Origin: Haliotis rufescens
Lineage: Eukaryota
Direction of reading: 5' to 3'
Assembly (NCBI RefSeq): GCF_023055435.1
Contig: NW_025963890.1
Span: 48,608,001-48,672,000 of the forward strand
DNA length: 64,000 bases
A program made the translations under genes and the position numbers. Under the pieces are notes generated by a model. The model saw only the letters and a list, made by a program, of their open reading frames with translations, had not been told where the DNA came from and did no database searches. Of the stretch, positions 2,148-53,201 are shown piece after piece (the stretch's first letter is position 1; each line of letters opens with the position of its first letter).

Positions 2148-2489
2148 GTTGGTTGGTTTGTTGTTTAATGCCACACTCAGCAATATTCCAGCTATATGAC
2201 GGCGGTCTGTAAATAATCGAGTCTGGACCAGACAATCCAGTGATTGACATCATGAGCCTCGATCTACGCAAATGGGATATGATGACATGCATCAACCAAG
2301 TCAGCGAGCCTGACCACCCAATCCTGTTTGTCGCCTCTTACTGCAAGCATGGGTTGCTGAAGACCTATTCTACCCTGGATCTTCACGGGTCACAAGCATG
2401 GGTTGCTGAAGACCTATTCTACCCTGGATCTTCACAGGTCACAAGCATGGGTTGCTGAAGACCTATTCTACCTCGGATCTTCACGGGTC
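2148..2489 (-). mobile_element. SINE-like family A (GACCC head, no tRNA region) with the 5' 49-bp module triplicated
   Basis: (AAAC)n-type tail and shared body. Three tandem copies of caagcatgggttgctgaagacctattctacc...cttcacRggtc start at 2344, 2393 and 2442. Confidence 0.9.
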
Positions 2490-10317: not shown

Positions 10318-10525
10318 TTGTTCATTTGTTGTTTAACGCCGCACTCAGCAATATTCCAGCTATATGACGGCGGTCTGTAAATAATCGAGTCTGAACAAGA
10401 CAATCCAGTGATTGATATCATGAGCATCGATCCATGCAATTGGGATATGATGACATGCATCGACCAAGTCAGTGAGTCTGACTACCCAATCCACTTAGTC
10501 GCCTTTTATGACAAGCATAGTCGCT
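10318..10525 (-). mobile_element. SINE family A, 5'-truncated, followed by a short inverted (+) fragment at about 10545-10605
   Basis: gtttaacgccgcactcagcaatattccagctatatgacggcggtctgtaaataatcgagtc matches the family body. Confidence 0.85.
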
Positions 10526-10735
10526 CCTAAAGTGAATACGTGCTGTGGTCAAAACTCACAGACTTGGTTGATGCATGTAATCGTATCCCAACTATAAACG
10601 TCAATGCAAGAGAATAATTTGTCAGAACATAACTTCAAAATACACAGGGGCTGTTTAAAGTATGACATATGGAACATGACATGGGACTATATCAATGATG
10701 TGTTTTTGAAGAAGAATTTTTAAGGTCAGTACTAA

Positions 10736-16312: not shown

Positions 16313-17362
16313 CACAGCCTGTTGTGACTCAGCTGTATTACTTAGTTCTGACAATCATGTCTTATTGTTTGCTTGTCGAGATAAAGTACAAGTGAAACTT
16401 ATGAGCATGTGTATCTGGCTGACACAGGAAAAAAAATTCAAGCCAGTTCCTTGGATTCAGACCCATAATCAGCAAATCCTGACATTGCAAAGGGATGCAA
16501 CTCTGCACAACAACTCACCTCCTCCATGTTCTTCATCAAGAACAAACTGACAAAAGGTCCTCTCTACCATATCAGTCCTTACATCTTAAGAGTTTTTACT
16601 AAATGTAAACGTTGAAATGGTAATTCATCCCTCATTTTATTAAATGACACAACCAACATGGGATAGGCTTGTTTTCTTTAACGAGTCCTCCTAGCTCAAA
16701 TTACCTTCTACAAAGAAACTATCCGCGTGCGAAGAACATCATTATGAAAATGTGCTCTGACAACGCTGACGTCTCAGGTTTGTCCCAGGTCTGAACGATC
16801 AGACTCTGATTACATTACCTTTTATTGCATTATCACCAGTAATATATAGCAATATGCATCACTATGCATCACTATGTATCATGACAAGCTGGACTGTTGG
16901 AGCTGAAAACCATATCCGAAATATTTGAATCCTAAATCTCATCATACAGTACCTCCCATCCCTGCCCCAAGAGTATGCTAACACAAGCATCGAGAGACTG
17001 GGACAAATTTTAGTCCAGACACAAAAAAGTCTCATATATCTGCAATTAAATATTTCAAGCTGTCACCTGCCTGCCAAGCTCTGTAAACCTGATACCGACT
17101 GATATGCATCTCCGCTTAACGAGTACAGGTGAGGTTCGACCTTGCCCTCGTGACACACACACCTGTATTTCTAGCACGCAAGTGAACCAGTTCAGAAAGG
17201 CATTGGTTGGAGGTTGTGTAGAGCCTTCAAGCTTTCACTTATCTAATAGGGTAACCTACAGACTATTTATAATGGAAAAGTACTTTTATTTCATAAGTGT
17301 ATTGAGGGATCATTTCCCCAGCTCACCAAGGGAAAGTACATTTGGCACACACAACTGACCAC

Positions 17363-17756
17363 TGTTTGTTATTTGTTGTCACACTCAGCAACATTCCAGC
17401 TTTATGATGGCAGTCTGTAAATAATCGAGTCTGGACCAGACAATCCTGTGATTTACATCATGAGCGCTGATCCACGCAATTGGGATACGATGACAAGAAT
17501 CAACCAAGTCAGCTAGCCTGACCAACCGATCCTGTTAGTCGCCTCTTACAACAAGCAAAGTTGACTTTTACGGCAAGCATGGGTTGCTGAAGACCTATTC
17601 TACCCTGGATCCTCACGGCAAGCATGGGTTGCTGAAGACCTATTCTACCCCGGATCTTCACGGCAAGCATGGGTTGCTGAAGACCTATTCTACCCCGGAT
17701 CTTCACAGCAAGCATGGGTTGCTGAACACCTATTCTACCCCGGATCTTCACGAGTC
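17363..17756 (-). mobile_element. SINE family A with the 5' 45-bp module in four copies
   Basis: Four tandem cggcaagcatgggttgctgaagacctattctaccccggatcttca units at 17571-17752. Confidence 0.9.
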
Positions 17757-17880
17757 TGATTTGTGGATAGGAATATATGAATCACATTCTTGTTGGGCAT
17801 AACATCATATCAAAAGCAGCCCTAGAAATAAAGAAAGCCAATTTGAAATTATACATCAACTGAACAATGTGTCCACTTCT

Positions 17881-22900: not shown

Positions 22901-22990
22901 ACCTGACAAGAAAATATGTCTTTTCTTGCTGTTGCATGTTTGTGAAATATGGGTCACGGGAGGGAACAAGACCCAAGCAATTGAAACAAA

Positions 22991-23156
22991 GTGAGTGAGT
23001 GAGTATTGTTTTACGCCGCTTTTAGCAATATTCCAGCAATATCACGGCGGGGGACACCAGAAATGGATTTCACACATTGTACCCATGTCGGGAATCGAAC
23101 CCGGGTCTTCGGCGTGACGAGCGAACGCTTTAACCACTAGGCTACCCGACCGCCCC
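22991..23156 (-). mobile_element. SINE family B, full length and young
   Basis: - strand GGGGCGGTCGGGTAGCCTAGTGGTTAAAGCG...GTCACGCC...GGGTTCGATTCCC. TSD aattgaaacaaa, with the empty site visible in the other two units of the triplication. Confidence 0.95.
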
Positions 23157-24191
23157 AATTGAAACAAAGACTTGTCTGAGGGTATGTTACCTGAAACAAG
23201 TAAACATCTTCTGGCCTTTCAATGATACGTGACAATCAACGCTCACTGCTATCAGCTACTTATGTTGAAAAGGGGTTAAAAAATACTGGGTTTAGTACAG
23301 AAAGGTAACATGACCACAGTGTGTGCATAAATACAGACGATAAAAGTAATGTGTCGTGCACTTGTGTTGATATAGTTGATATCAAAAGACACTCGGGTGA
23401 GATTCTCCATTTATCAATACATAAAAATGACTGTTAACTGACCATGCTGATCCTTGAATTTAGACGCACATCAGGAATTACGGAAGCCAAGCCATTATCT
23501 GAATACAAGAATGAAGCCACAACTACCCCCCCCCCCACCCCCCTAACAGAAACCTTATCACCACACCTCTTTGGGGGGATGCCTTTAGATTGCAAAGAAG
23601 CTAAATGGGAGAAGTTTCTTTGAGGTAGGACGTTCTAAAAACATGAAGTTGCTGCAACCTTGAAGAGAAGTCGACCCATATGTGCCCCATCAGAATCTGG
23701 GGAGCATTATCTGTTTCATACAACCTTGACCTTTGATATTTGCGCTACATTTGCCTCTTGTTCAGTTCTGGGAGGATGCCATTGCAAGTCTAATGCGCAA
23801 TACCCTCAGCTGGTGTTGGGAAATAAGCACCTTTGCTTCAAATTGAGTTATATGGAACAACAAATCTGACATGTTGTCCCACTTCCAGGCCTGGAAAATG
23901 ATTCATGCGGTTTACCACTTGAGCATAAAAGTATGTAACTTCCCAAGTATCAGAGGCAACTAACACTCTGAATGTATTAGAATTAAAGGGAGAAGGAACA
24001 GACAAGTTTCAGTCTTAAAAAACATGTAATCCAATTCTCTTGACATTTCTAGTCTTTTTAGCTCCCAATAAGGTAAAATGTTCCATTGATTTAATCTTAA
24101 CATTATTATTAAGTGACATGGATGAGTCAAAAGTGTTGAAGATGGATAACTGAAGGACACTTCTCTTGGTGATTTCATGTGGAGGTGATGT

Positions 24192-24437
24192 TTGTTTGTT
24201 TGTTGTTAAATATTCGGCCTATATGACGGTCTATAAATAATCGAGTTTGGACCAGACAATCGAGTGATATGCCTCATGAGCATCAATCTTCGCAATTGGG
24301 ATACGATGACATGCATCAGCCAAGTCAGTGAGCCTGAACACCCAATCCCGTTAGTCGCCTCTTACGACAAGCATAGTCGCCTTTTACAGCAAGCATGGGT
24401 TGTTCAAGGCCTATTCTACCCCTGTTCTTGATGGGTC
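24192..24437 (-). mobile_element. SINE family A, full length
   Basis: 12-bp TSD tggaggtgatgt (24180-24191, 24438-24449) fixes the 5' end at GACCC. Confidence 0.92.
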
Positions 24438-25098
24438 TGGAGGTGATGTGTATATCGAGTGTCTCTCTATACAGTGTTTTCTAGATATGTAGACAACAGT
24501 TTAAAATGAGACAACAAACACAGACACTAAAGTTGCTGTCATCAATGATATTCAAACATTTTCTACATAAACACTGTGGCCTAAAAACGATAACTAAAAT
24601 CTAATGATCTGAACAAGTCATGACATAGAGAAATATACATGCCAATGTTCAGCTTCCTCATGCTGGCAATTCTATGGGCGGACAAGTTTACAGAACAAAA
24701 TATGCCTTATGAGGGAATTTAAGAGCAGGGTCAAATATAGGTAAATATAATAAACATATTGCAAAAAATGCAAATAACATCTGTACTTAAAATATGAAAA
24801 TTGGAATAAGTGCTGATCCCGACGACTAACTATAAACCATTTTACATTTCAGTTTGAACAAAAATGACTCAGTAATGGCCATAAATAGCTTACTCATGGT
24901 TGATGAGGCGGCCATACTACAAATCGGATAGGGACCCTTTGAACAAATAGGGGTGCCATCATTGAGAAGAAGCATGTGACACACCCACTGACTATGGACA
25001 AATAGGCCACAACGTAAGCTCACTTGACTTGGCCGAGCTAAAAACTAATGATTTCTGTTTCCAGTGATCACTTCAATTTGCATCTGTCACTGCAATAC

Positions 25099-27779: not shown

Positions 27780-27982
27780 TGTTGTTTTATGCAACTCAGC
27801 AATATTCCCTTGACATGATAGCAGTCTATCAATAATCAAGACCAGACAATCCAGTGATGGACGTCATGAGCATTGATGTAATTGGGCCATGATGACATGC
27901 ACCAAGTCAGTGAGCCTGACCACCCGATTCTGTAATAACAAGTAAGGGTTGCCGATCTTCTACCCCGGATCTTCATGTGGGC
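27780..27982 (-). mobile_element. SINE family A, degraded
   Basis: accagacaatccagtgat and accaagtcagtgagcctgaccacccg...taccccggatcttca are present. Confidence 0.75.
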
Positions 27983-28212: not shown

Positions 28213-28409
28213 TGAGTGAGTGAGTGAGTGAGTGAGTGAGTGAGTGAGTGAGTGAGTATGGTTTTACGCCGCTTTTAGCAATATTCCAGCAATATCACGG
28301 CGGGGGACACCAGAAATGGGCTTCACACATTGTACCCATGTCGGGAATCTAACCCTGGTCTTCGGCGTGACGAGCAAACGCTTTAACCACTAGGCTACCC
28401 GACTGCCCC
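28213..28409 (-). mobile_element. SINE family B with an expanded (ACTC)n tail
   Basis: About 11 GTGA units on +, a full body, and an aacttcttga duplication in the flanks. Confidence 0.92.
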
Positions 28410-35628: not shown

Positions 35629-36034
35629 TAGGGCTGGGACGGGTAACTCGGGTACTAGGATCGGGTGGGTCCTGAGTAGGACTCGGGTACCCACAGGACT
35701 ACCCGGATATATTGTTTAATGACAAAAAATAACTTACACTCTATGGTTACAATACAAGTCATTAATGTTCCCATTACTTTCTGACAATGCACCCATTCCT
35801 TCTGATTTTTATATGCTTGAATATAGATAAAACTCCATGCAGTAAACTTCAGTGTATGCATGACCAGATCGTTTTACACATGTATTTGAATACATTTTGC
35901 CAGGACTACGGTCAAACCTTTCCAAATCGGACACTTTGTACCTATTTCTAAATATCTACAACGGCTACCCGGGTAGGGTCGGGTAATAGGGTGGAGGGTA
36001 CCTGGGTAGTAAATTTTGACTCGTCCCATCCCTA
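35629..36034. mobile_element. hAT-type MITE
   Basis: TIR TAGGGCTGGGACG / CGTCCCATCCCTA, exact 8-bp TSD CAATCAAC (35621-35628, 36035-36042), and many subterminal gggta/taccc motifs. Confidence 0.92.
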
Positions 36035-36364
36035 CAATCAACCTAGCAAAGCCATGGCCATCTTTCTTACAAAGACATATTTTCACAGATGCATTGATGC
36101 ATTTTGACAAATAGGATGTTGTATGAAATAGAGCTGCCTTTGATTATATTTTGATCAGATTCTTCTGTTCAGTTTAAGTAATGGATCACGACAAAAGGTG
36201 TAAAGCATGAATCGATCTTGAAAAGATACTTCACCTCTCCTACCCAGCCCTGTTCCGAAAAAGCTATAGGGTATTTGTATTCTATGATGGATATGGTGTT
36301 AAACACAAGCCCTGCAATAACATCTATAATCCCTGCAGATAAACTCCATGTCTCACTCCCAGGG

Positions 36365-36676
36365 GACCCGTGAAGATCCGGGGTGGAATAGGTCTTCAGC
36401 AACCCATGCTTGCCGTAAAAGGTGACTTTGCTTGGCCTAAGAGGTGACAAACGGGATCGGGTGGTCAGGCTTGCTGACTTGGTTGATGCATGTCATCGAT
36501 CCCATTTGCGTGGATCGATGCTCATGATGTCAATCACTGGATTGTCTGGTCCAGACTTGATTATTTACACAATTGGGATCGATGACATGCTTCAACCAAG
36601 TCAGTGAGCCTGATCCCCGGATCCCGTTAGTGGCCTTTTACAACAAGCATAGTCGCCTTTTACGTCAAGAATGGGT
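36365..36676. mobile_element. SINE family A foldback: + copy 36365-36568 fused to an inverted piece 36569-36676
   Basis: gacccgtgaagatccgggg... reads forward, then aattggga...caaccaagtcagtgagcctg...gcatagtcgcctttt reads in reverse. Confidence 0.85.
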
Positions 36677-37044
36677 CACTTGGAACAGTAGTTCATTCAT
36701 ATCACAGAATGGCTGCTTGATGTGGGTGGGAAGCCCAAAGTGATGTAGGACTTAGATGCAGCTAAAGAGCGTGGGTATGCTGCTGACTAGATTAACATTT
36801 AGTCTATGAATTCTTATATTTCACAATACCCTTCTCGACTCTAAAATGAAACAAATAATTTTCCAGATGCAGATTTCATGTGTGGAACAGAGCTAGCTAA
36901 AGCTGGCTAGACTTGCTTCTGTATGCATATCTAGACTGCTGTTTTTTCCATATTCCAGTCATAGCTGACAAACCTAGAAGCATGACAAAGGAGAATCCAG
37001 GATTTGAACCTATGATCATAGGTTCCAAGCCTGCCTACAAAGGA

Positions 37045-37330
37045 AGGCCTGGGTTTCGATCCCGGGCCGTATTATACCAAAAGACGTTAAACGATGGTCC
37101 TTGATGTTACCCTGTCTAGCGCTCGGCATTAAAGGCCAAAAACAAGGACTGGTCGGCTTGGAATCAGTATACTGTGTCTGAGTGGGGTATTCATGCTAAA
37201 CTGCAGCATGGTATCTCAGTGTGCTAGCACCAGTAATCAGTATTAGTCCAGACTAGTACAAGCAGCCACACACACATGCATGCATGTCGCTAATCTTGGA
37301 CGCGATGTTTAAACCCCATTTCACCACACT
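37045..37330 (+). mobile_element. SINE family D, slightly 5'-truncated
   Basis: tcgatcccgg B box, ataccaaaagacgttaaa...gcgctcggcattaa Meta-like domain, atttcaccac tail. Confidence 0.85.
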
Positions 37331-37574
37331 TTAAACAACAGTGCCACTGCGGCCCCTTGATACAGAAAACTTTCATTTCTTATGCATGAACTGAAGTGAA
37401 TTATGTAAGATCAGAGATAAAATTAGCTAAGATAATGCTTTCTTGCATAGTTCTTCTTACATCAGAACATTACAAATGTTACACGAAACCAAAAAAATCC
37501 CAAAAACATAAAGGGTATTAAACGAATACAATTACACATTTGAAACAGACATGAAGAGCATTAAAAGGTTCAAA

Positions 37575-37756
37575 GTGAGTGAGTGAGTGAATAAGTGAGT
37601 GAGTATGGTTTAACGCCGCTTTTAGCAATATTCCAGCAATATCATGGCCAGGGAAACCAGTTATGGGCTTCACACATTGTACCCATGTCGGGAATCAAAC
37701 CCGGGTCTTCGGCGGGACGAGCGAACACTTTTACCACTAGGCTACCCGACCGCCCC
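37575..37756 (-). mobile_element. SINE family B
   Basis: (GTGA)n tail, full head, and a flanking aaaaggttMaaagtga duplication. Confidence 0.9.
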
Positions 37757-38763
37757 AAAAGGTTAAAAGTGAAATGAAACAAATGCTGTAGATATTGGGT
37801 TATAAAGCTTAAAAACACAAGGATTTAACATTTATTTAAAATTGATATGTTTAATAGAATAAAAGACCTTTGGAGTCATTTTGATTTAACATTAATTAGG
37901 TTTCTGAATCAAACATCCTATTTGTCATCTTCCAGACAATGGCATAAGGATCTATACAGAAACATTGCCATTACAGTAAAATAAAGAAGCTGTCACCCAT
38001 AAATTGTGTCTACAAAGAGAATGACAAGAGTTCAAAAAGCGAGATGGATCATCTAAACTTTGTGATGCGATGAAGAACATAATTAGACATCCCTGACACA
38101 TGATGAGGATTCCTTCATTTATACCATCCAATAGCAATCATTGAATTAAATCAACAGTATTCCCCGGCAGGTCAAAGTGGCTGTCGAACTCGTGGGTGGT
38201 TGGATTAAGAGCGTATCTTTCTGTGACGGATGGTGACCAGAAGTGACATATTTCTAACCAAGGTTACAAAGTTCTGCCACTGCCACCAGACAAGAGCTCC
38301 ACTTGATTGAGGCAATTAGATCAGAGCAAACATGGGAAGACAATCAATGCTCACAATGGGCGTGGTCACAGAGAGAAGGGCAAGAATGGATTGTCCATCA
38401 CTCTGCAGCCCGTCTGCCTCAACATGAAGTCACTCTATATGGGCAGCCTCAATGAGTCTCAAGGCCGTGTCACCACTGCTCTCCATTTCAGGATCGACAG
38501 AATTACATGAGACAAGATCCAGGCTTCCACAGTTTCCTTTTTTGGTATAACAAGAACATATCTGGGTTTCCTCTTTTGGGCATAGTTGAGTCACAGTTCC
38601 ACAACAACATTCCTGTCGGCCACTGTCAATCCTTCTTGATGAGGTTGGCTCTGGTTTCTTATCGTTTAACAGAAAGATGTTTTCTTATTTATTTCAAGTT
38701 CAATCATAAAATTATTGAGATATTTTTCTGGGTATCCATATATACAGAACCAGATAAATATGC

Positions 38764-40062
38764 TCCATGACTGAGGCTAGAGGGGAGGTTCCATGACTGA
38801 GGCTAGACTCCTTGACAGAGGCTACAGTGGAGGCTCCATGACTGAGGCTCGAGGGAAGGCTCCATGACTGAGGCTAGAGGGGAGGCTCCATGACTGAGGC
38901 TAGACTCCATGACAGAGGCTACAGTGGAGGCTCCATGACTGAGGCTCGAGGGATGGCTCCATGACTGAGGCTAGAGGGGAGGCTCCATGACTGAGGCTAC
39001 ATAACAAAGGCTAGTGAGGTGGCGCCATGACAGGCTTGAGGGTTGTCTCCATGACTGAGGCTAGAGGGGAGGCTCCATGACTGAGGCTACATAACAGAGG
39101 CTAGTGAGGAGGCGCCATGACAGGCTTGAGGGTTGTCTCCATGACTGAGGCTAGAGGGGAGGCTCCATGACTGAGGCTACATAACAGAGGCTAGTGAGGA
39201 GGCGCCATGACAGGCTGGAGGGTTGTCTCCATGACTGAGGCTAGAGGGGAGGCTCCATGACTGAGGCTACATAACAAAGGCTAGTGAGGAGGCGCCATGA
39301 CAGGCTTGAGGGTTGTCTCCATGACTGAGGCTAGAGGGGAGGCTCCATGACTGAGGCTACATAACAAAGGCTAGTGAGGAGGCGCCATGACAGGCTTGAG
39401 GGTTGTCTCCATGACTGAGGCTGGAGGGTTGTCTCCATGACTGAGGCTAGAGGGGAGGCTCCATGACTGAGGCTACATAACAAAGGCTAGTGAGGAGGCG
39501 CCATGACAGGCTGGAGGGTTGTCTCCATGACTGAGGCTAGAGGGGAGGCTCCATGACTGAGGCTAGAGGGGAGGCGCCATGACTGAGGCTAGAGGGGAGG
39601 CTCCATGACTGAGGCTACATAACAGAGGCTAGTGAGGAGGCGCCATGACAGGCTGGAGGGTTGTCTCCATGACTGAGGCTAGAGGGGAGGCTCCATGACT
39701 GAGGCTACATAACAAAGGCTAGTGAGGAGGCGCCATGACAGGCTGGAGGGTTGTCTCCATGACTGAGGCTAGAGGGGAGGCGCCATGACTGAGGCTACAT
39801 AACAGAGGCTAGAGGGGAGGCGCCATGACAGGCTGGAGGGTTGTCTCCATGACTGAGGCTAGGGGGGAGGCGCCATGACTGAGGCTAGAGGGGAGGCTCC
39901 ATGACTGAGGCTACATAACAGAGGCTAGTGAGGAGGCGCCATGACAGGCTGGAGGGTTGTCTCCATGACTGAGGCTAGAGGGGAGGCTCCATGACTGAGG
40001 CTAGTGAGGAAGCTCCATGACTGAGATTACATAAGAGAGGCTAGTGGGGATCCATGACTGAG
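38764..40062. repeat. Minisatellite with a 26-bp basic unit and 90-bp higher-order repeat
   Basis: ctccatgactgaggctagaggggagg; 90-bp period at 39061, 39151, 39241, 39331. Confidence 0.95.
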
Positions 40063-40652
40063 GCAACATGAGACACAGGTAATTTCAAGCCAACGCCCCA
40101 GTCCTGGAGTTGTACTACTTCATGGACCACTGGTTTTAGTAATACCTTCAATGGAGGCTGAAAAGCTGTTGTAGCGTATTTACGTCACAAACTACTTTCA
40201 TTCATCTGGCAAGGTGTAAACTGCACGTGGCCTACTAACTCCTGTCCCTATACAGACCCAGTAATCAGTCGGGGTTCAGTAAGTCAATGACTTATACTTG
40301 AAGTTGCTTTGAACAGTATTTCCGTTATATTATTGTGTACCAGATAATGGGAGAGGAAATTTCAAAGTGACACAGGTTGTAGGCATTTATACCATTGTAG
40401 AACCCACTGAGAGGGTATGGGACATCTTGGGTGTCTAAAATAGGATGTTTCCGAAATTGATGGAGACAACCGAGGTTCATGTGCCCATCGCATTCCCTTC
40501 TTCAAGATGGCGACCTACTTCTTCAACTTGGAAACAACACATCAAACATAAGACTTGGGCCTCATTCAACAAAAGTAAACATGATTACAACTGTAAAAAG
40601 TTTAAAGAATGGAAATTACAACTGTCTTAGCCGGGGTTCTATACGTGAGTCC

Positions 40653-40940
40653 TACGAGGGGCGTTCCATAAGTTTTGCAACTTCAATGTAAGACCAAGTC
40701 GCAGAACATCTTTTGCACTTTTATTTTTCAATATAATCTTCATTCACCTGAATACACTTATTCCATTTGTTTTTCAAGCTTTTAATTCCACTTTTATAGA
40801 CATCCGCAGATTGGACCTCTAACCACGCCTCTGTGGCAGCCTTTATGTCCTTGTCATCCTGGAAGCGTCTTCCACGTAGGGCAGATTTCATTTGCCGGAA
40901 CAGGAAATAAGTCACTGGGGGCTAAGTCTGGGCTGTACAG
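40653..40940 (-). mobile_element. Mariner transposon 3' fragment (transposase pseudogene plus TIR)
   Basis: YSPDLAPSD (frameshift) FLFRQMKSALRGRRF...KWNKCIQVNEDYIEK* is the canonical mariner C-terminus. TA|CGAGGGGCGTTCCATAAGTTTTGCAAC TIR at 40653. Confidence 0.93.
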
Positions 40941-40981
40941 TATTAAAAGCTTGAAAGTTTATCCACCACACATCCAATACA

Positions 40982-41105
40982 CAATGACCTAGACTCTATA
41001 ATAAGGATTGAATACACACTGACCTTGACCCTATAATCACGATTGAATACACACTGACCTTGACCCTATGATCACCCATCCAAAACACAATGACCTGAAT
41101 CCATG
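40982..41105. repeat. Short degenerate tandem repeat (about 35 bp, 3-4 units)
   Basis: gattgaatacacactgaccttgaccctat occurs twice, with diverged flanking units. Confidence 0.75.
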
Positions 41106-41773
41106 ATGACACCAGGACCGACAATACAACATGGCCCAGTAACATTACAGAACTTCTGTCTTTCTGGCGTAATCACCTTACCACCTGTTACCAAGGACAT
41201 TTCAGAAACCATTACAAGTATATTAACCAAGTTATCCCATCAGTTCAGTGTGTCACATTATTTCTCTGTTACCAGTGACACAAAAGTGAGGCATTGCTAC
41301 ATAACTGTCCTCTCTGTCTCCAAAATAACAGCAGCTTGGAGTCTACAGATGTCACTGAGAGGGTGCAAATAAGCCATCCACACACACTTGTTGATTCATA
41401 TAGCCTGTCACATCACACAAGTAATTAAATTGTATCTATCCATAAATATTTCAACTGCTGACCTGAAAATATCCCAGATGTTGCAATGGCTGAAAGAAAC
41501 AGCAACACACAATGTCTTCAGCTCCCTGAGAAGTCATTCGTGTACGTTGATCATAAGGAGTGCAATCAGATAACGTCATTCTATTCTATATATCTACCTG
41601 GGTACGTTTTTTTTATCAAATATCATTATCAGAACGTTTAACATATCTTCAACATCAGTCCATATTTGATTCTCTATCAGGGTGGTCTGCCAGTAATCAA
41701 GCCCGGACCAGACAAACCAGTGACTGAAAGTATGACCAACTGTCCAAGCCGTCTGGGAGGATGACACACAATC

Positions 41774-43392
41774 AGGGTGTCCAGGCACTGTGAACACGGA
41801 GCAGGTAGTCCAGGCACTGGGGACTCGGAGCAGGTAGTCCAGGCACTGGGGACTCGGAGCAGGTAGTCCAGGCACTGGGGACTCGGAGCAGGTAGTCCAG
41901 GCACTGGGGACTCGGAGCAGGGTGTCCAGGCACTGTGAACATGGAGCAGGGTGTCCAGGCACTGGGGACTCGGAGCAGGTAGTCCAGGCACTGGGGACTC
42001 GGAGCAGGTAGTCCAGGCACTGGGGACTCGGAGCAGGTAGTCCAGGCACTGGGGACTCGGAGCAGGTAGTCCAGGCACTGTGAACACGGAGCAGGTAGTC
42101 CAGGCACTGGGGACTCGGAGCAGGTAGTCCAGGCACTGGGGACTCGGAGCAGGTAGTCCAGGCACTGGGGACTCGGAGCAGGTAGTCCAGGCACTGGGGA
42201 CTCGGAGCAGGGTGTCCAGGCACTGGGGACTCGGAGCAGGGTGTCCAGGCACTGGGGACTCGGAGCAGGGTGTCCAGGCACTGGGGACTCGGAGCAGGTA
42301 GTCTAGGCACTCGGGACTCGGAGCAGGTAGTCCGGGCACTGGGGACTCGGAGCAGGTAGTCTGGGCACTGGGGACTCGGAGCAGGGTGTCCAGGCACTGG
42401 GGACTCGGAGCAGGGTGTCTAGGCACTGGGGACTCGGAGCAGGGTGTCCAGGCACTGGGGACTCGGAGCAGGTAGTCTAGGCACTGGGGACTCGGAGCAG
42501 GTAGTCCAGGCACTGGGGACTCGGAGCAGGTAGTCCAGGCACTGGGGACTCGGAGCAGGTAGTCCAGGCACTGTGAACACGGAGCAGGTAGTCCAGGCAC
42601 TGGGGACTCGGAGCAGGTAGTCCAGGCACTGGGGACTCGGAGCAGGTAGTCCAGGCACTGGGGACTCGGAGCAGGTAGTCCAGGCACTGGGGACTCGGAG
42701 CAGGGTGTCCAGGCACTGGGGACTCGGAGCAGGGTGTCCAGGCACTGGGGACTCGGAGCAGGGTGTCCAGGCACTGGGGACTCGGAGCAGGTAGTCTAGG
42801 CACTCGGGACTCGGAGCAGGTAGTCCAGGCACTGGGGACTCGGAGCAGGTAGTCTGGGCACTGGGGACTCGGAGCAGGGTGTCCAGGCACTGGGGACTCG
42901 GAGCAGGGTGTCCAGGCACTGGGGACTCGGAGCAGGTAGTCTAGGCACTGGGGACTCGGAGCAGGTAGTCCAGGCACTGGGGACTCGGAGCAGGTAGTTC
43001 AGGCACTGGGGACTCGGAGCAGGGTGTCCAGGCACTGGGGACTCGGAGCAGGTAGTCCAGGCACTGGGGACTCGGAGCAGGTAGTCCAGGCACTGGGGAC
43101 TCGGAGCAGGTAGTCCAGGCACTGGGGACTCGGAGCAGGTAGTCCAGGCACTGGGGACTCGGAGCAGGTAGTCCAGGCACTGGGGACTCGGAGCAGGGTG
43201 TCCAGGCACTGGGGACTCGGAGCAGGGTGTCCAGGCACTGGGGACTCGGAGCAGGGTGTCCAGGCACTGGGGACTCGGAGCAGGTAGTCCAGGCACTGGG
43301 GACTCGGAGCAGGTAGTCCAGGCACTGGGGACTCGGAGCAGGTAGTCCAGGCACTGGGGACTCGGGGCAGGGTGTCCAGGCACTGGGGACTC
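41774..43392. repeat. 29-bp GC-rich minisatellite (about 56 units)
   Basis: gtccaggcactggggactcggagcaggta/gt. It abuts a degenerate family-A SINE piece at about 41690-41770. Confidence 0.97.
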
Positions 43393-43699
43393 CATATTAC
43401 TTCATAATTCTTTCAGGAGGTTCCATTTCTGTTACATCACTATGGTTCCTTTTCAATTTGATATCTCAACTTTTGTTCTAAATATATCCATATTGCATGC
43501 ATCAAAACATCAACGCCAGATAAGCAATAAGTCTTGATTGTCTCCAACACTGCTCACTGCTGTGCTTTATTACCTACTTTCATATGCATTGCGACATTCG
43601 TATGTTCAGGTTTCATTCCAACTGATGAGGCCACACTTATGATGCCCTAAGACATTAGAGCTTGTGCTCATTAATTTTACTGTTTCCCCGTTAGTAAGA

Positions 43700-44540
43700 T
43701 CACTGTTCTCTTTTAATCACTGTTTCCCATTTATCACTGTTCTCTGTTAATTATTTTTCTCTGTTAATCACTGTTCTCTTTTAATCACTGTTCTGTTGAT
43801 CACTGCTTTCTGGTAAGCACTGTTCTCTGTTAATCACTGTTCTCTATTAATCACTGTTCTCTTTTAATCACTGTTCTGTTGATCACTGCTCTCTGGTAAG
43901 CACTGTTCTCTGTTAATCACTGTTCTCTATTAATCACTGTTCTCTTTTAATCACTGTTCTGTTGATCACTGCTCTCTGGTAAGCACTGTTCTCTGTTAAT
44001 CACTGTTCTCTATTAATCACTGTTCTCTTTTAATCACTGTTCTGTTGATCACTGCTCTCTGGTAAGCACTGTTCTCTGTTAATCACTGTTCTCTATTAAT
44101 CACTGTTCTCTTTTAATCACTGTTCTGTTGATCACTGCTCTCTGGTAAGCACTGTTCTCTGTTAATCACTGTTCTCTATTAATCACTGTTCTCTTTTAAT
44201 CACTGTTCTGTTGATCACTGCCCTCTGGTAAGCGCTGTTTTCTGTTAATCACTGTTCTCTGTTAGGCACTGTTCTCTGTTAATCACTGTTCTGTTGATCA
44301 CTGCTCTCTGTTAAGCGCTGTTTTATGTTAATCACTGTTCTCGATTAATCACTGTTCTCTGTTAATCACTGTTCTCTGTTAATCACTGTTCTCTGTGAAG
44401 TACTGTTCTGTTGATCACTGCTCTCTGTGAAGCACTGTTCTCTGTTAAGTGCTGTTCTCTGTGAAGCACTGTTCTCTGTGAAGCACTGTTCTCTGTTAAT
44501 CACTGTTCTGTTAATCACTGTCCCCTGTTAATTACTGTTT
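43700..44540. repeat. 17-bp minisatellite with an 83-bp higher-order repeat
   Basis: aatcactgttctctgtt units; 83-bp period (43861, 43944...). Confidence 0.95.
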
Positions 44541-45163
44541 CAAGCAATTGTCGGTAAAAGATTTGTCAGTGACGAGCCTTGCCGTTGAACAACTCTTTCA
44601 TAATTGATTTGTTTAAAGCCTCCAATAATAATTGAAAAGAATAATGTAACGATTTATACAAATTAGTCACCGCTGGGTTCTAAACATTTGCCACTTAGCA
44701 ATTCTAACCATGTCTGGGGGCATCAGAGACTATTTTTTTCTGACAGAGATGCGCTTTCAAATATTCAATCAAAGACCAGTGTGTGACACTTTGTCCAGGT
44801 TGGAAGGCTGAGTTTTTCTGTTTGATGTGAGTCTCTGATGGGAAATTGTGAGTTCAGCTCTTGTACCAGATCGGCAGCCCCTGGGCTTTCCCCAGTGCAG
44901 CTTGGTCAACAATCCAGATCAGCCATCATCAATTGCTTCCATTAATCACTGGTGCAATTTAATTGCTTATTTGATTCTAAAAAAGTAATTATCAGTCAAA
45001 TGAGATTATGTCCCACACAACACAAACATACTTGTATTCTACATGGTGATGAGGGGATGTTTTTTTAAATCCTTACTTGATGGATCAATTGAATTATTAT
45101 ATCAAATTTACCGTGTGAGAACAATATTTATTCAACCAGGTGATGAATAAAGGCCTAATGTTT

Positions 45164-45417
45164 GTTTGCTAGTTGTTTAATGCTGCACTCAGCAATATTC
45201 CAGCTATATGACTGCGGTCTGTAAATAATAGAGTCTAGACCAGACAATCCAGTGATTGACATCATGAACATCGATACACCCAATTTGGATACAATGACAT
45301 GCATCAAGCAAGTTTGCAAGCCTGAACGCCTGACCCTGTTAGTCGCCTCTTACGACAAGCCTTTTACGGCAAGCATGGGTTGCTGAAGATCTATTCCATC
45401 CCAGACCTTCATGGGGC
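45164..45417 (-). mobile_element. SINE family A, full length
   Basis: 11-bp TSD gcctaatgttt (45153-45163, 45418-45428). Confidence 0.9.
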
Positions 45418-45501
45418 GCCTAATGTTTAGAACCAAAGATTGTGTGTGGGTAAATGAAGTAAATGGAATTGTCTGTCACAACAAAAGGTTGGTGATACTA
45501 T

Positions 45502-45758
45502 TGTTTGTTTGTTGTTTAACGCCGCACTCAGCAACATTCCACCTATATGACGGCCATCTGTAAATCAAGTCTCAACCAGACAATCCAGTGATTGATGTCA
45601 CGAGCATCGATCCTCATTGTTGGGATACAATGACAACAATCAAGTCAGGGAGCTTGACCACCCAATTACGTTAGTCACCTCTTACAACAAGCACAATCAC
45701 CTTTAACGTCAAGCATGGGTTGTTGAAGACCTATTCTACCCCGGGTCTTCACAGGGAC
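45502..45758 (-). mobile_element. SINE family A, full length
   Basis: Tail, body and head are all recognisable. Confidence 0.88.
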
Positions 45759-46204
45759 AGTGCTATTGTACTGCAACCCTTTGAGATCAATTAGAGCATG
45801 ACACAGTTCATGGTAAGACATTCAGCTTGCAATTACAGGACAACATAAACTCGTCATCTTCTTGTTGTGTCGGTAAGACATTCAGATTGAGCCAAGACTG
45901 CAACTGCAACTGCACTAGCGCAATTACATGACACCATGAACCCTTCACCTGTCTGTCATGACAATTTCTGCACACAACCTGACGCCTGGCATGCCATAGT
46001 GTTACATCTGGCATGTTCAGTGACAGGAATAACAACAGCCCCAGTCGAACCACTCCATGCACACCGACCATAAAAACATTAAAAACTCCTAGTAACAACA
46101 TTGCATGGTGGCATTTTCCTCAAATACTCTGGCAGTAAACCAGGTCAAAGCAATGATTACAGCACAGTTTTGTTTGGAGGCCCCCTCTTCACTGATTACA
46201 CTGA

Positions 46205-47782
46205 TCTCACCAGACAGTCTGTACACAACTACCCTGATCCCAGCAGACAGTCTGAAGGCCCTCTGTACAAAACTACCCTGATCCCAGCAGACAGTCTGAA
46301 GGCCCTCTGTACACAACTACCCTGATCTCACCAGACAGTCTGAAGGCCCTCTGTACACAACTACCCTGATCCCAGCAGACAGTATGAAGGCCTTCTGTAC
46401 ACGACTACCCTGATCCCAGCAGACAGTCTGGAGGCCCTCTGTACACAACTTCCCTGATCCCAGCAGACAGTCTGAAGGCCCTCTGTACACAACTACCCTG
46501 ATCCCAGCAGACAGTCTGGAGGCCCTCTGTACACAACTACCCTGATCCCAGCAGACAGTCTGGAGGCCCTCTGTACACAACTACCCTGATCCCAGCAGAC
46601 AGTCTGGAGGCCCTCTGTACACAACTTCCCTGATCCCAGCAGACAGTCTGAAGGCCCTCTGTACACGACTACCCTGATCCCAGCAGTCTGAAGGCCCTCT
46701 GTACACGACTACCCTGATCCCAGCAGTCTGAAGGCCCTCTGTACACGACTACCCTGATCCCAGCAGTCTGAAGGCCTTCTGTACACGACTACCCTGATCC
46801 CAGCAGTCTGAAGGCCCTCTGTACACGACTACCCTGATCCCAGCAGTCTGAAGGCCCTCTGTACACAGCTACCCTGATCCCAGCAGACAGTCTGAAGGCC
46901 CTCTGTACACAACTACCCTGATCCCAGCAGACAGTCTGGAGGCCCTCTGTACACAACTACCCTGATCCCAGCAGTCTGAAGGCCCTCTGTACACAGCTAC
47001 CCTGATCCCAGCAGACAGTCTGAAGGCCCTCTGTACACAGCTACCCTGATCCCACCAGACAGACTGAAGGCCCTCTGTACACAACTACCCTGATCTCACT
47101 AGACAGTCTGGAGGCCCTCTGTACACAACTACCCTGATCCCAGCAGACAGACTGAAGGCCCTCTGTACACAACTACCCTGATCCCAGCAGACAGTCTGGA
47201 GGCCCTCTGTACACGACTACCCTGATCTCACCAGACAGACTGAAGGCCCTCTGTACACAACTACCCTGATCTCACTAGACAGTCTGGAGGCCCTCTGTAC
47301 ACAACTACCCTGATCCCAGCAGACAGTCTGGAGGCCCTCTGTACACGACTACCCTGATCTCAGCAGACAGTCTGGAGGCCCTCTGTACACAACTTCCCTG
47401 ATCCCAGCAGACAGTCTGAAGGCCCTCTGTACACGACTACCCTGATCTCACCAGACAGACTGAAGGCCCTCTGTACACAACTACCCTGATCTCACCAGAC
47501 AGTCTGGAGGCCCTCTGTACACAACTACCCTGATCCCAGCAGACAGTCTGGAGGCCCTCTGTACACAACTTCCCTGATCCCAGCAGACAGTCTGAAGGCC
47601 CTCTGTACACAACTACCCTGATCTCACCAGACAGTCTCGAGGCCCTCTGTACACAACTACCCTGATCCCAGCAGACAGTCTGGAGGCCCTCTGTACACAA
47701 CTACCCTGATCCCAGCAGACAGTCTGGAGGCCCTCTGTACACGACTACCCTGATCCCAGCAGACAGTCTGGAGGCCCTCTGT
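46205..47782. repeat. 44-bp minisatellite (about 36 units) with a block of 40-bp deletion variants
   Basis: ctgtacacaactaccctgatcccagcagacagtctgaaggccct; units lacking 4 bp cluster at about 46660-46860. Confidence 0.97.
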
Positions 47783-48021
47783 TCAACCAACAGACACAGA
47801 CCAAAGGTGCTGGGTGAGTGATGCAGCATGGCTGGGATGGAGGGAAATAGTCAACTATCTCCAACATCATACAAGTGAATAGTTACAGCAAAGGTAGACA
47901 TCATGATCGCACAGTTCATTTTGGACCAGTTTGTTTTCGTAATATGGTTGGTTAAAACACAACCAGTCCCCAAATGATAATCAGCAAACTAGTCTTAGTT
48001 CTTCTCCAAGTTCATCGATTA

Positions 48022-48299
48022 GTGAGTGAGTTGGGTATAACGCAGATTTTAACAGTATTCCAGTTATATCGCGGCATGTCATCTTAAAGTGGAAGGAAAG
48101 CCCGAAGTGATGCAGGTCTCGGACATTTACTACTTCGGTGAAACCCACGAGCATGGGTATGGTGCTGACAAACCTAGAAACATAATCGGGGCGAACCGGG
48201 ATTCGAACCCACAATCATAGGTTTCTGGCGTGCCCAAGGGACGCAACTCTGCACAGCGAATCACGGCACCTTAGACGACTGGGCCACCCATGCCCCCCC
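48022..48299 (-). mobile_element. SINE family C, full length
   Basis: 13-bp TSD agttcatcgatta (48009-48021, 48300-48312); A and B boxes intact. Confidence 0.93.
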
Positions 48300-49056
48300 A
48301 GTTCATCGATTAAGCTTTGCATCAGTCTGCCCAGGTAAGCTACTAGGTTAGAAGGAAAGGGACACTGAACAAAATATGTCAAAATAAGTCATAACTCAAG
48401 TTCAAGAAGGTTGAAGAATGATGATGCAGTTCAGACTTTCCAATGCGTGTGAATTTTATTTTCCAAATATTTCAAATTAAACATATTACCCAGTAAGTAG
48501 AAAAGATGGCATGTTAAATTTCATAAAAGATGTTTTTTGTTTGATTTATTGACTAAGTTTACGTCACATTAAGCCGTTAGTTCCTGAGTTGTATAACTTG
48601 ATGAAGCCAGGTGCAGTTTTCGCCTGCAGATATGGAGCTCTGACAGGCAGGAACACTAATGTCCTTGCCAGCGACAGGGTTCTGGAGTTGTCATGTCACC
48701 ACTAAGCTCCTTTGCAAAGGAAAAACTGTCAGATTTTACAATGACGATGCTTGTTAAACAAGTAATCACCATGCCTACAACATGGAACATGATTAATGAG
48801 AAGGATGAACACCCTGTCCCCGTGGAGACACAGGACATACCATCAACATAGAGTTGTTGAACAGGTAAACTGACACATAAAAGTAACAAGATCAATTCAA
48901 AAATTGCATCAGGATGTTTTTTATCCAGAGTTTTAATTCATATTAGATAGAAACAGTGAGATAAAAAAGGACCTTATTTTGAATATTTACTTTGTACAAT
49001 ATTTTGACCTCTTTTATAAATGTGTGCCAATATCAAGTAGCAAATTTATGTGGATC

Positions 49057-52940: not shown

Positions 52941-53201
52941 GTTTGTTTGTTGTTTAAAGCCGCACTCAGCAATAATCCAGCTGTATGACGGCAGTCTGTA
53001 AATAATCGAGTCTGGACCAGTCAATCAAGTGATTAATATCATAGGCATCGATCCAAGCAATTGGGATACATGACATGCATCAACCAAGTCAGCGAGCCTG
53101 ACCACCCAATCCTGTTGGTTGCCTCTTATGACAAGCATAGTCGTCTTTTACAGCAAGCATGTGTTGCTGAAGACCTCTTCTACCCCGGATCTTCACGGGT
53201 C
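52941..53201 (-). mobile_element. SINE family A, full length
   Basis: Ends cttcacgggtc; imperfect TSD tcttgaaact / cctcgaaact. Confidence 0.9.

What the first reader, a model, noticed from the sequence alone, without database searches (positions are those of the whole stretch)
24192..24437. Abundant SINE-like family with no Pol III head but a precise, structured 5' end: candidate self-processing RNA or internal promoter
Seen: about 10 copies (2148, 10318, 17363, 24192, 27780, 36365, 45164, 45502, 52941) share the 3' tail of the tRNA-SINEs here (...ctggaatattgct...gcggcgttaaac) but have no A/B box. Independent insertions start at the same base, GACCCGTGAAG, and TSDs at 24180/24438, 45153/45418 and 52931/53202 fix that end. 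The head can fold as GACCCGT/ACGGG(A)TC closing a junction that contains hairpin TGAAGATC/GGTCTTCA (its loop GGGT is complementary to the downstream ACCC, a possible pseudoknot) and hairpin GTCG-TAAGAGG-CGAC, followed by GTCAG/CTGAC. Established: some non-LTR elements (R2, RTE, L1Tc) define their 5' end with an HDV-like ribozyme cutting just before a G that starts P1. From memory, GTCGTAAGAGGCGAC resembles RTE-clade 5' UTRs (unverified). Inference: a chimeric RTE-head/Nimb-tail element whose 5' end is made by RNA self-cleavage or an internal Pol II promoter. Canonical HDV L3 and J4/2 residues are not evident, so a ribozyme would be a non-standard fold.
Basis: partly seen in the sequence, partly recalled or inferred. 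Interest (0 to 1): 0.75.

Follow-up and report, generated by a model that had tools for sequence, protein, structure and literature searches.

The report
Abalone SINE with LINE-derived folded head
This is an abundant short jumping gene whose front end is copied from a folded piece of a longer jumping gene's leader, not from a tRNA. Elements of this kind were described in molluscs in 2016, and nothing here shows that it cuts itself.

Summary
The flagged 246 bases are one old copy of a SINE-like retroposon with at least 6,325 candidate copies. Copies have target-site duplications, a simple-repeat tail and a near-constant start, (G)ACCCGTGAAG.

The ribozyme reading is not supported. Rfam, ARAGORN and hand threading find no HDV-like or tRNA fold in the head.

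The head is homologous to bases ~59-135 of the 5' UTR of an I/Nimb-like LINE in the same genome. There it lies directly behind a 57-nt, P4-less HDV-like ribozyme, which the SINE lacks. The SINE's 3' stem-loop also resembles that LINE's 3' end, so head and tail are both LINE-like, and the head is not from an RTE.

This is the "LP-SINE" kind of Matetovici et al. 2016. Earlier follow-ups of this scan reached the same reading on other DNA of this genome.

One hairpin of the head is kept by compensatory changes. The proposed pseudoknot and closing stem are untested.

New here:
- The first 45-53 nt of the head is amplified into tandem arrays of up to 62+ units, with 1,352 exact unit-to-unit junctions genome-wide.
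- LINE-type modules almost never form an element's 5' end (4 against 978).

What sets the SINE's 5' end remains open. A transcription start is my best guess.

The parts
24192..24437 (-). Flagged SINE copy, old and diverged, 246 nt. Element nt 1 = window 24437.
24180..24191 (.). Target-site duplication, copy next to the element's 3' end (TGGAGGTGATGT).
24438..24449 (.). Target-site duplication, copy next to the element's 5' end.
24404..24431 (-). Hairpin 1 of the head (element nt 7-34). Its loop is GGGGTAGAAT. In this copy the stem is TCAAGA/CCTTGA instead of TGAAGA/TCTTCA.
24389..24437 (-). Head unit (element nt 1-49), the piece that is tandemly amplified in other copies.
24354..24368 (-). Second copy of hairpin 2, GTCG-TAAGAGG-CGAC (4-bp stem, 7-nt loop). 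The first, imperfect copy lies at 24376-24390. The 22-nt duplication is specific to the SINE.
24192..24240 (-). 3' stem-loop region plus (ACAA)n-like tail, degraded in this copy.
2148..2489 (-). SINE copy with three 49-nt head units (2343-2489) and a single hairpin 2.
10318..10526 (-). 5'-truncated or rearranged SINE copy. It starts inside the hairpin-2 region, and an inverted fragment lies at 10555-10591.
17363..17756 (-). SINE copy with four head units of 45 nt (about 17581-17756). The junction is GCTTGC|CGTGAAG.
27780..27978 (-). Internally deleted SINE copy.
36365..36567 (+). SINE copy, cut at its 3' side by an inverted partial copy at 36570-36680(-).
45164..45416 (-). SINE copy flanked by the direct repeat AACATTAGGC.
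45502..45755 (-). SINE copy.
52941..53201 (-). SINE copy used as the genome query. An imperfect direct repeat AGTTTC(G/A)AG flanks it.
22955..23155 (-). tRNA-derived SINE with a (CTCA)n tail (approximate bounds). It shares only the ~43-nt 3' stem-loop with the flagged family.

Best explanation
The element is an LP-type SINE, a non-autonomous retroposon copied by a LINE's reverse transcriptase.

Parts:
- The first ~75-100 nt are a structured module taken from the 5' UTR of an I/Nimb-like LINE. It consists of hairpin 1 with the conserved loop GGGGTAGAAT, a C-run that could pair with that loop, and hairpin 2, GTCG-TAAGAGG-CGAC.
- In the LINE the module sits directly behind a 57-nt, P4-less HDV-like ribozyme that makes the LINE's 5' end. 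The SINE carries the module but not the ribozyme.
- The 3' stem-loop plus simple repeat is of the same type as that LINE's 3' end and is the likely recognition site for the reverse transcriptase.

Shown: identity of the family, homology of both ends with the LINE, absence of any known ribozyme or tRNA fold in the SINE, and RNA-level conservation of hairpin 1.

Inferred:
- The SINE's near-constant 5' end is the start of its transcript. The head supplies or positions initiation, as the 2016 paper proposed. It is not a self-cleavage site.
- The conserved fold acts on the RNA, in the 5'-end function of the LINE machinery.

The first 45-53 nt of the head is also prone to tandem duplication and has grown into minisatellite-like arrays at many insertions.
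For: Family, TSDs and 5' ends.

LINE homology:
- 18 LINE 5' ends were read (12, 6). All 18 begin GGCAC right after unrelated flanks.
- In 15 of them the complete module follows at about nt 58. One has a 10-nt deletion and two are interrupted.
- blastn of the SINE against three LINE loci gives 61 nt at 79-80% identity (E 1.5e-10 to 6e-9) at that position and nothing elsewhere in the LINE.

Ribozyme in the LINE only:
- RF02682 scores 29.4 bits (E 6e-4) and RF00094 21.6 bits on L077:1501-1557.
- The same kind of search on SINE copies gives no ribozyme hit at E<=10.
- The pattern 'ribozyme end + SINE-type head' has only 2 matches in the genome.

LINE type: Exo_endo_phos E 1.5e-14 and RVT_1 E 2.9e-36. 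The C-terminal part of RNase_H scores E 4e-4.

Tail: the LINE ends in a stem-loop with the core GCTGCAATATTGC, followed by (CTCA)n. It is 79% identical over 34 nt to the SINE tail (E 0.002), and the stem letters differ on both sides (by eye).

Hairpin 1:
- 90.3% of cells pair.
- 3 of 8 pairs change on both sides: AU 23 / UA 11; AU 24 / GC 15; UG 23 / CG 7 / AU 5.
- 0 of 500 shuffles reach the observed covariation score.
- RNAalifold predicts the same hairpin on its own.
- A third stem variant, GGGGAC/GTCCCC, occurs in a few copies.
- The U.G pair, standard only on the sense strand, points to sense-strand RNA.

5'-end scatter: the first base differs in 5 of 30 copies, against a mean of 1.2 of 30 per column. 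Three copies start 1-3 nt inside the element. This fits a transcript start or end-copying noise better than a fixed cleavage site.

Literature: Matetovici et al. 2016, PMC4758252, section 10 and passages read.
Against: - Promoter activity is untested.
- If the module by itself placed a start at its own 5' edge, LINE copies beginning at the module should exist. LINE-type modules are preceded by the ribozyme's TT in 978 cases and by two non-T letters in only 4.
- No Inr/DPE-like or A/B-box motif was recognised (by eye; no tool).
- The fold is not more stable than shuffled sequence (z -0.74 to +0.79).
- The pseudoknot and hairpin 2 show no covariation, because they hardly vary.
- The covariation rests on few independent events: the LINE-SINE split plus one or two within the LINE.
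- I could not align this family to the published Haliotis LP-SINE, because figures and supplements were not available.
- No RNA data show the 5' end.
Confidence: 0.5

Rival explanations
1. Processing instead of a promoter. SINE copies are transcribed as part of longer host or read-through RNAs. A cellular nuclease then makes the 5' end at the module. Either a 5'-3' exonuclease is stopped by the pseudoknotted fold (xrRNA-like), or an endonuclease recognises the fold.
For: - The partner-type LINE itself relies on processing, by a ribozyme, not on a fixed start.
- The module is conserved as RNA structure, not just as sequence.
- The 5'-terminal C-run can pair with a G-run (by eye; in the LINE the minimum-energy fold pairs it with the loop).
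- This reading explains why LINE copies keep the ribozyme (978 against 4): a ribozyme-made 5'-OH end is not a substrate of 5'-monophosphate-dependent exonucleases (established knowledge, recalled).
- It also explains why multi-unit copies keep all their units.
- According to the 2016 paper, the module is the very 5' end of LINEs in locust, zebrafish and turtle.
Against: - No match to any Rfam family, xrRNA and tRNA models included, at E<=10.
- No excess folding stability.
- The pseudoknots have no comparative support.
- The small-RNA libraries, which capture 5'-monophosphate ends, show no pile-up at the SINE start, though depth was very low.
Confidence: 0.2
2. The SINE head is a new self-cleaving ribozyme that cuts just before G1.
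For: - The 5' end is near-constant.
- A SINE-specific closing stem GACCCGT/ACGGG(A)TC starts at +1 and appears in the minimum-energy fold of young copies.
- LINE-type modules, which lack that stem, do not form 5' ends.
Against: - No ribozyme family matches.
- The HDV-like threading fails two defining features: no CC in the loop TAAGAGG for P1.1, and no C in the stretch after GTCAG/CTGAC (by eye).
- The first base varies in 5 of 30 copies.
- Copies with 3-9 head units, each starting GACCCGTG or similar, persist inside one pair of TSDs. The same TGTGAC junction recurs at several separate loci, which suggests that multi-unit RNAs were copied without being cut at internal units.
- The closing stem is imperfect in older subfamilies (ACAGGAT in window copy 2148).
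Confidence: 0.07
3. Few master copies are driven by external promoters in their flanks. The head is kept only because the LINE proteins need it on the RNA, comparable to the 5' RNA element that the R2 protein binds. All other copies are dead on arrival.
For: - The module is conserved as RNA in an element that codes for nothing.
- LINE-type modules do not create starts.
- A young subfamily of near-identical copies (5-15 differences in about 271 nt in most of the 30) fits a few masters.
Against: - The 30 young copies share no upstream sequence, and no master was found.
- At least 6,325 candidate copies and several subfamilies, including multi-unit ones, imply that many successive sources each kept a working flank.
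- LP-type heads recur in several mollusc lineages according to the 2016 paper.
Confidence: 0.13

Closest known systems
LP-SINEs (Matetovici et al. 2016, Genome Biol Evol, PMC4758252): Lsa_2, Hdi_LP/Hmi_LP, Oco/Oed_LP, Sgl_LP
   Same: Short, TSD-flanked retroposons that end in simple repeats. Their first ~70 nt are homologous to the start of LINE 5' UTRs, in place of a tRNA or 5S head. They were described in Haliotis, and they share a tail with tRNA-SINEs. Section 10 was read.
   Different: The paper treats the head as a possible promoter. It does not mention a pseudoknot, or any hairpin in the head. In its LINEs the module is the first 68 nt. In this genome's LINE a 57-nt HDV-like ribozyme precedes it. 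Identity with Hdi_LP could not be checked: figures are not held and supplements are closed. The paper cites AATATA before the Haliotis tail, whereas these copies have AATATT.
Pr77 / L1TcRz hallmark of trypanosomatid L1Tc, NARTc, ingi and RIME (abstracts seen in the listing)
   Same: A ~77-nt 5' hallmark shared by LINEs and their non-autonomous derivatives, tied to 5'-end formation.
   Different: There the shared 77 nt are themselves both promoter and HDV-like ribozyme. Here the ribozyme and the shared module are separate, and the SINE keeps only the non-ribozyme part.
R2 elements and their non-autonomous SIDE derivatives (Eickbush and Eickbush 2012, abstract seen); the 5' RNA pseudoknot bound by R2 protein is recalled, not looked up
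   Same: An HDV-like ribozyme at the 5' end with a conserved structured RNA just downstream. The non-autonomous derivatives keep the LINE's ends.
   Different: SIDEs keep the ribozyme and this SINE does not. R2 is site-specific, whereas these insertions are dispersed.
HDV-like ribozymes (Rfam RF02682, RF00094)
   Same: The LINE's first 57 nt align over P1, P3/L3 and the GCUAA stretch of J4/2. Cleavage before G1 would explain the LINE's constant start.
   Different: The score is below Rfam's gathering score (29.4 against 44) because P4 is missing. The SINE head does not match at all.
SINE-derived satellites (scaled reptiles 2023, PMC10702118; limpet PcH-Sat 2024, PMC11121367; titles and abstracts seen) and the tandem 5' monomers of mouse L1 (recalled)
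   Same: A piece of a retroposon amplified head to tail. As in mouse L1, the repeated piece is the 5' end.
   Different: The unit here is only 45-53 nt and equals one RNA hairpin plus linker. Arrays mostly stay attached to the rest of the SINE, inside its TSDs.

Membership tests
SINE (classical definition) | Short non-autonomous retroposon with TSDs and a LINE-type 3' end | tested here: met
   The element is about 250-270 nt. 20 of 30 loci have an exact direct repeat of 7 nt or more. The tail stem-loop is similar to a LINE 3' end.
SINE (classical definition) | Head derived from tRNA, 5S or 7SL RNA, with an internal Pol III promoter | tested here: not met
   ARAGORN finds 0 genes. There is no Rfam hit at E<=10 on copy 52900-53240 and no tRNA, 5S or 7SL hit on 17330-17800. 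The loop GGGGTAGAAT and the 7-nt loop of hairpin 2 recall tRNA D- and T-loops only by eye.
LP-SINE (Matetovici et al. 2016) | Head homologous to the 5' part of a LINE 5' UTR, with homology limited to about 70 nt | tested here: met
   SINE nt ~3-75 align with LINE nt ~59-135 in 15 of 18 LINE 5' ends read. blastn gives 79-80% over 61 nt and nothing elsewhere in the LINE.
LP-SINE (Matetovici et al. 2016) | Sequence homology with the published LP head (Nimb-17_LMi, Hdi_LP) | not testable with these tools
   The published sequences are in figures and supplements that are not held. Only the text was read.
HDV-like ribozyme (SINE head) | P1 from +1, P1.1 formed by two L3 cytosines, a catalytic C in J4/2, and P2 closing the double pseudoknot | tested here: not met
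   No covariance-model hit. By eye, the loop TAAGAGG has no C, the stretch after GTCAG/CTGAC has no C before the next helix, and P1 needs a bulge.
HDV-like ribozyme (LINE nt 1-57) | The same features | tested here: inconclusive
   RF02682 scores 29.4 bits with E 6e-4 in a 211-nt search, below the gathering score of 44. By eye, P1 is GGCACUC/GAGUGCU with G1.U, L3 is UCCACGU, GG follows P1, the J4/2 stretch is CUAA, and P2 is GAAGAGC/GCUCUUC. There is no P4. Cleavage was not assayed.
I/Nimb-like LINE (source of the head) | APE endonuclease, RT and RNase H in ORF2, plus a separate ORF1 | tested here: met
   Exo_endo_phos and RVT_1 are found. The C-terminal part of RNase_H scores E 4e-4, 21 bits, under the cut-off of 25.8 on a fragment. 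Assignment to a clade by a tree was not done.
Retroposon-derived tandem repeat | Head-to-tail copies of a piece of the element | tested here: met
   There are 1,352 exact unit-to-unit junctions in the genome and 0 in the reversed control. 19 arrays of 3-62 units were read.

The most novel reading that the evidence does not exclude
The ~75-nt module is a portable RNA device that makes or guards a 5' end without any promoter. Longer read-through transcripts are trimmed until the pseudoknotted fold stops the nuclease (xrRNA-like), or the SINE version with its extra closing stem cuts itself by an undescribed fold. LP-SINEs would then be SINEs that need neither Pol III nor a promoter of their own. 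The abalone LINE would carry two stacked 5'-end devices, a ribozyme and this module.
Probability: 0.12. Interest if true: 0.85.

Novelty: new member of a known kind. Interest (0 to 1): 0.4.

Why it matters
SINEs are defined as Pol III elements with heads taken from small RNAs. LP-SINEs are the one reported exception, and their mode of expression has been left open since 2016.

This genome supplies three constraints for that question:
- The shared module is conserved as an RNA hairpin, not only as DNA sequence.
- In the LINE it sits behind a ribozyme and does not itself create element 5' ends (4 against 978).
- The SINE thrives, with at least 6,325 candidate copies, without the ribozyme.

Together these make simple bench tests informative: cap status of the 5' end, a cleavage assay, an exonuclease-resistance assay and a reporter assay.

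The arrays show a retroposon 5' hairpin turning into a minisatellite. That is a small, clean example of how interspersed repeats seed tandem repeats.

Tried and rejected
1. Known RNA families. The Rfam gathering scan of the window gave only a tRNA-SINE hit. Permissive scans of two SINE copies gave nothing relevant. ARAGORN found nothing.

2. HDV-like threading of the SINE head by eye. Rejected for lack of L3 cytosines and a J4/2 cytosine.

3. tRNA-likeness. The positions of GGTAGAAT and of the 7-nt-loop hairpin resemble a tRNA's D and T regions by eye. No model supports this, and the hairpin lacks the central TC of a B box, so it stays a remark.

4. Folding energy. It is not better than shuffled sequence for the SINE head, a single head unit, the LINE module or the ribozyme. 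Nested folding cannot score pseudoknots.

5. L051. I took the sequence behind the 62-unit array for a possible LINE. No LINE ORF is there, and only its last 170 nt belong to another repeat. Dead end.

6. Cross-species copies. One scan of metagenome contigs with a degenerate module pattern gave a single match, in what looks by eye like a bacterial coding region, which I take for chance. I therefore have no comparison beyond this genome.

7. RNA ends. Only three small-RNA (miRNA-seq) runs were available as raw reads. Laid on L003:1000-2600, they gave 7, 110 and 13 reads and no pile-up at the SINE start. The contigs of run X1 cover the SINE heavily but cannot show ends.

8. Partner LINE. The LINE that carries the module ends in (CTCA)n, like the tRNA-SINEs. 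The flagged family ends in (CAAA)/(CCAA)n. Its exact partner lineage was not found.

9. A compensated G8-C33 to C8-G33 swap in the flagged copy. Only 3 copies in the genome carry it, too few to count as a lineage.

10. The supplements of PMC4758252 (TSD tables, consensus sequences) were not opened. They may show whether this family equals Hdi_LP.
Full report
**What is at the coordinates.** Window 24192-24437 holds, on the minus strand, a 246-nt element. It is flanked by the 12-nt direct repeat TGGAGGTGATGT (24180-24191 and 24438-24449) and ends in an (ACAA)n-like run. The motif GTCGTAAGAGGCGAC with up to two mismatches occurs 8 times, all on the minus strand, against 0.03 expected; 0 of 100 shuffles reach 8. 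The flagged copy is old and starts GACCCATCAAG. The copies at 10318, 27780 and 36365 are truncated, deleted or joined to inverted fragments.

**Genome-wide check of the 5' end.**
- A search of the window's own genome with the copy at 52941-53201 gave 6,325 first-look candidates, of which 40 were scored.
- All 40 long matches begin at query position 1-10 (29 at 1, 8 at 2, one each at 3, 5 and 10) and run to 260-261, at 90-92% identity apart from the query itself.
- In the 30 loci fetched, the upstream flanks are unrelated.
- The element begins GACCC in 23, CACCC in 3, TACCC in 2, GACCT in 1 and GACAC in 1.
- Twenty of 30 have an exact direct repeat of 7 nt or more. In 11 of these it ends exactly before G1. 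In five it stops 1-6 nt short at a mismatch inside a longer repeat (by eye). In three it runs 2-3 nt into the element. One is low-complexity sequence.
- L022 and L023 are one insertion in a duplicated segment.
- The first base differs from G in 5 of 30 copies, against a mean of 1.2 of 30 per column.

So the observation of a near-constant, TSD-fixed 5' end is confirmed, with a little scatter at the first one to three bases.

**No Pol III head and no known ribozyme.** ARAGORN finds no tRNA in the window. Rfam at gathering level finds only the tRNA part of a different SINE at 23080-23151. Permissive Rfam scans find nothing at E<=10 in 52900-53240, and five weak, unrelated hits in 17330-17800. That tRNA-SINE shares only its last ~43 nt with the flagged family (34 of 43 identical).

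**Where the head comes from.** Earlier notes of this scan pointed to a 2016 paper and to a LINE with an HDV-like ribozyme, and I tested both.

- The paper is Matetovici et al., PMC4758252 (passages, section 10). It describes "LP-SINEs": TSD-flanked short retroposons of Littorina, Haliotis, Ostrea, Saccostrea and scallops. Their first ~70 nt are homologous to the start of the 5' UTRs of Nimb-17_LMi, I-3_DR and RTE-9_CPB. The authors suggest that the piece is a promoter and state that experiments are needed.
- To find such a LINE here, I searched the genome with Rfam's RF02682. This gave 46 matches of 25.6-31 bits, none over the cut-off of 44, and most of them exactly 57 nt long.
- I read 18 of these places (12, 6). 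All 18 start GGCAC directly after unrelated flanks.
- In 15 of them a stretch clearly homologous to the SINE head follows at nt ~58. It shares CCCGTG, the loop CCGGGGTAGAAT, CAGCA.CCCAT and GTCGTAAGAGGCGAC. One copy has a 10-nt deletion there, and two are interrupted.
- blastn of a SINE copy against three of these LINE loci finds 61 nt at 79-80% identity at that place (E 1.5e-10 to 6e-9) and no other part of the LINE.
- In a short permissive scan the 57-mer scores 29.4 bits with RF02682 (E 6e-4) and 21.6 bits with RF00094. The alignment covers P1, P3/L3 and the GCUAA stretch and skips P4. By eye it also has G1.U, GG after P1, and P2 GAAGAGC/GCUCUUC.

**The LINE.**
- One copy (L083) has a 430-aa ORF without a Pfam match, then Exo_endo_phos (E 1.5e-14) and RVT_1 (E 2.9e-36). 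It is interrupted by a second copy of the same LINE.
- Other copies continue with the C-terminal part of RNase_H (E 4e-4, 21 bits, under the cut-off, on a fragment) and a Cys/His motif seen by eye.
- This domain set is that of I/Nimb-type elements, not RTE. No tree was made.
- Its 3' end is a stem-loop, GTCAC-GATATGGCTGCAATATTGCCGAT-GTGAC, followed by TTTAAATATAA and (CTCA)n.
- This is 79% identical over 34 nt to the SINE tail (E 0.002). By eye it has the same architecture as the tails of the flagged family and of the tRNA-SINEs, with stem letters changed on both sides.
- The tRNA-SINEs also end in (CTCA)n. The flagged family ends in (CAAA)/(CCAA)n, so its exact partner is probably a sister lineage.

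Head and tail are thus both of this LINE type. The "RTE head, Nimb tail" chimera is not supported.

**The SINE lacks the ribozyme, and the module does not make LINE ends.** The pattern 'end of ribozyme, 0-8 letters, SINE-type head' has 2 matches in the genome, both with unrelated spacers. LINE-type modules are preceded by the ribozyme's TT in 978 places and by two non-T letters in 4. If LINE RNAs often started or were cut at the module's 5' edge, ribozyme-less LINE copies should be common, and they are not. This weighs against the simplest promoter reading. It also weighs against any reading in which the LINE version of the module defines a 5' end by itself. It does not exclude SINE-specific features, such as the first two letters or the extra ACGGGATC. 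Nor does it exclude an exonuclease model, in which the ribozyme's 5'-OH end is simply not a substrate.

**Structure.**
It is no more stable than shuffles: -39.3 against -36.65 +/- 3.6 kcal/mol, z -0.74. Other constructs give z from -0.82 to +0.79.
- I aligned 16 LINE and 24 SINE heads (A1). Hairpin 1 pairs in 90.3% of cells.
- Three of its eight pairs change on both sides: AU 23 / UA 11; AU 24 / GC 15; UG 23 / CG 7 / AU 5.
- 0 of 500 shuffles reach the observed covariation score, and slid controls pair in 30-54% of cells against 84.6%.
- RNAalifold predicts the same hairpin.
- A third stem version, GGGGAC/GTCCCC, occurs in a few copies.
- Most of the 357 single-site variants are uncompensated, as expected for decay after insertion.
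- The loop/C-run pairing and hairpin 2 hardly vary, so they are neither supported nor refuted.
- These compensations amount to few independent events.
- The closing stem GACCCGT/ACGGG(A)TC has no LINE counterpart, and it is imperfect in older SINE copies.

**Tandem amplification of the head.**
- Two window copies carry three 49-nt units and four 45-nt units of the first part of the head.
- A genome search with the three-unit piece found arrays at many loci. I read 19 arrays of 3 to 62 units.
- Of the 20 array pieces first listed, 13 are followed by hairpin 2 and 9 by the SINE body within the stretch held.
- Direct repeats bracket the whole element in the four checked by eye: L045 with 3 units, L057 with 6, L042 with 9 and L052 with 32.
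- Genome-wide there are 1,352 exact unit-to-unit junctions (806 + 546) and 0 in the reversed control. Linkers vary: T plus 4-7 C, TCTCCCC, TGAC, or none.
- Units are more alike within arrays (mean 0.93) than between arrays (0.86), and linkers are array-specific. This points to growth or homogenisation in place.
- The TGTGAC junction, which contains the exact SINE 5' end, recurs at several separate loci. This suggests that some multi-unit elements were themselves transposed.
- A first-stage note elsewhere in this genome (s1-813737) had spotted one such array.

**RNA data.** Only three small-RNA runs were available as raw reads. Laid on L003:1000-2600, they gave 7, 110 and 13 reads. The main species is an antisense RNA of about 31 nt at L003:1674-1704, with 63 and 9 molecules in two runs. 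Its first letter is U, because the plus strand has A at 1704, so it is piRNA-like. Nothing piles up at the SINE start, and depth is too low to conclude anything about the 5' end.

**Comparison and verdict.** The element fits the LP-SINE description in every feature I could test. The one untestable point is direct alignment to the published sequences. The terms LP-SINE(s), LP SINEs, 'LINE-derived head' and 'LINE-derived 5' occur only in that paper in the held library. A search combining HDV-like, ribozyme, non-LTR, SINE and Nimb found the trypanosome Pr77/L1TcRz, R2/SIDE and schistosome twister systems. It found nothing on this module.

So the kind is known, and the scan has met it before on other DNA of this genome. 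The ribozyme idea is not supported. What the module does, and what sets the SINE's 5' end, remain open. I put a transcription start first (about 0.5), nuclease processing at the fold second (about 0.2), external promoters at a few masters third (about 0.13) and a new ribozyme last (about 0.07).

Noticed in passing
window 2343-2489 and 17581-17756; L051 (62 units), L056 (40+), L052 (32): The first 45-53 nt of the SINE head forms tandem arrays. There are 1,352 exact junctions genome-wide, with array-specific C-rich or TGAC linkers, and most arrays are still attached to the SINE body inside its TSDs.
   Followed up: yes
L068-L079, L090-L095 (nt 1-57 of the LINE): A 57-nt, P4-less HDV-like sequence forms the exact 5' end of a highly repeated I/Nimb-like LINE. 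RF02682 scores 29-31 bits, under the gathering score.
   Followed up: partly
L003:1674-1704 (minus strand): An antisense small RNA of about 31 nt starting with U, against the SINE body, seen in two of three small-RNA runs (63 and 9 molecules). It is piRNA-like.
   Followed up: partly
window about 22955-23155, about 28258-28290 and about 37605-37638 (all minus strand): tRNA-derived SINE copies, or their tails, ending in (CTCA)n. This is the same terminal repeat as the LINE's 3' end in L096, so that LINE is probably their partner.
   Followed up: partly
L083:5121: One LINE copy is interrupted inside ORF2 by the 5' end of a second copy of the same LINE.
   Followed up: no
L022 and L023 (one contig, about 4 kb apart): The same SINE insertion with identical flanks occurs twice, which indicates a local segmental duplication.
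   Followed up: no
window 36365-36680 and 10318-10591: SINE copies joined to inverted partial copies of the same family (inverted pairs), suggesting rearrangement between copies.
   Followed up: no
window 36000-56000: G+C rises to 0.46-0.51 with a strong negative GC skew (-0.33 at 48-52 kb), unlike the rest of the window.
   Followed up: no
window 24404-24431: In the flagged copy, hairpin 1 carries a G-C to C-G swap (TCAAGA/CCTTGA). Only 3 copies in the genome have it.
   Followed up: yes
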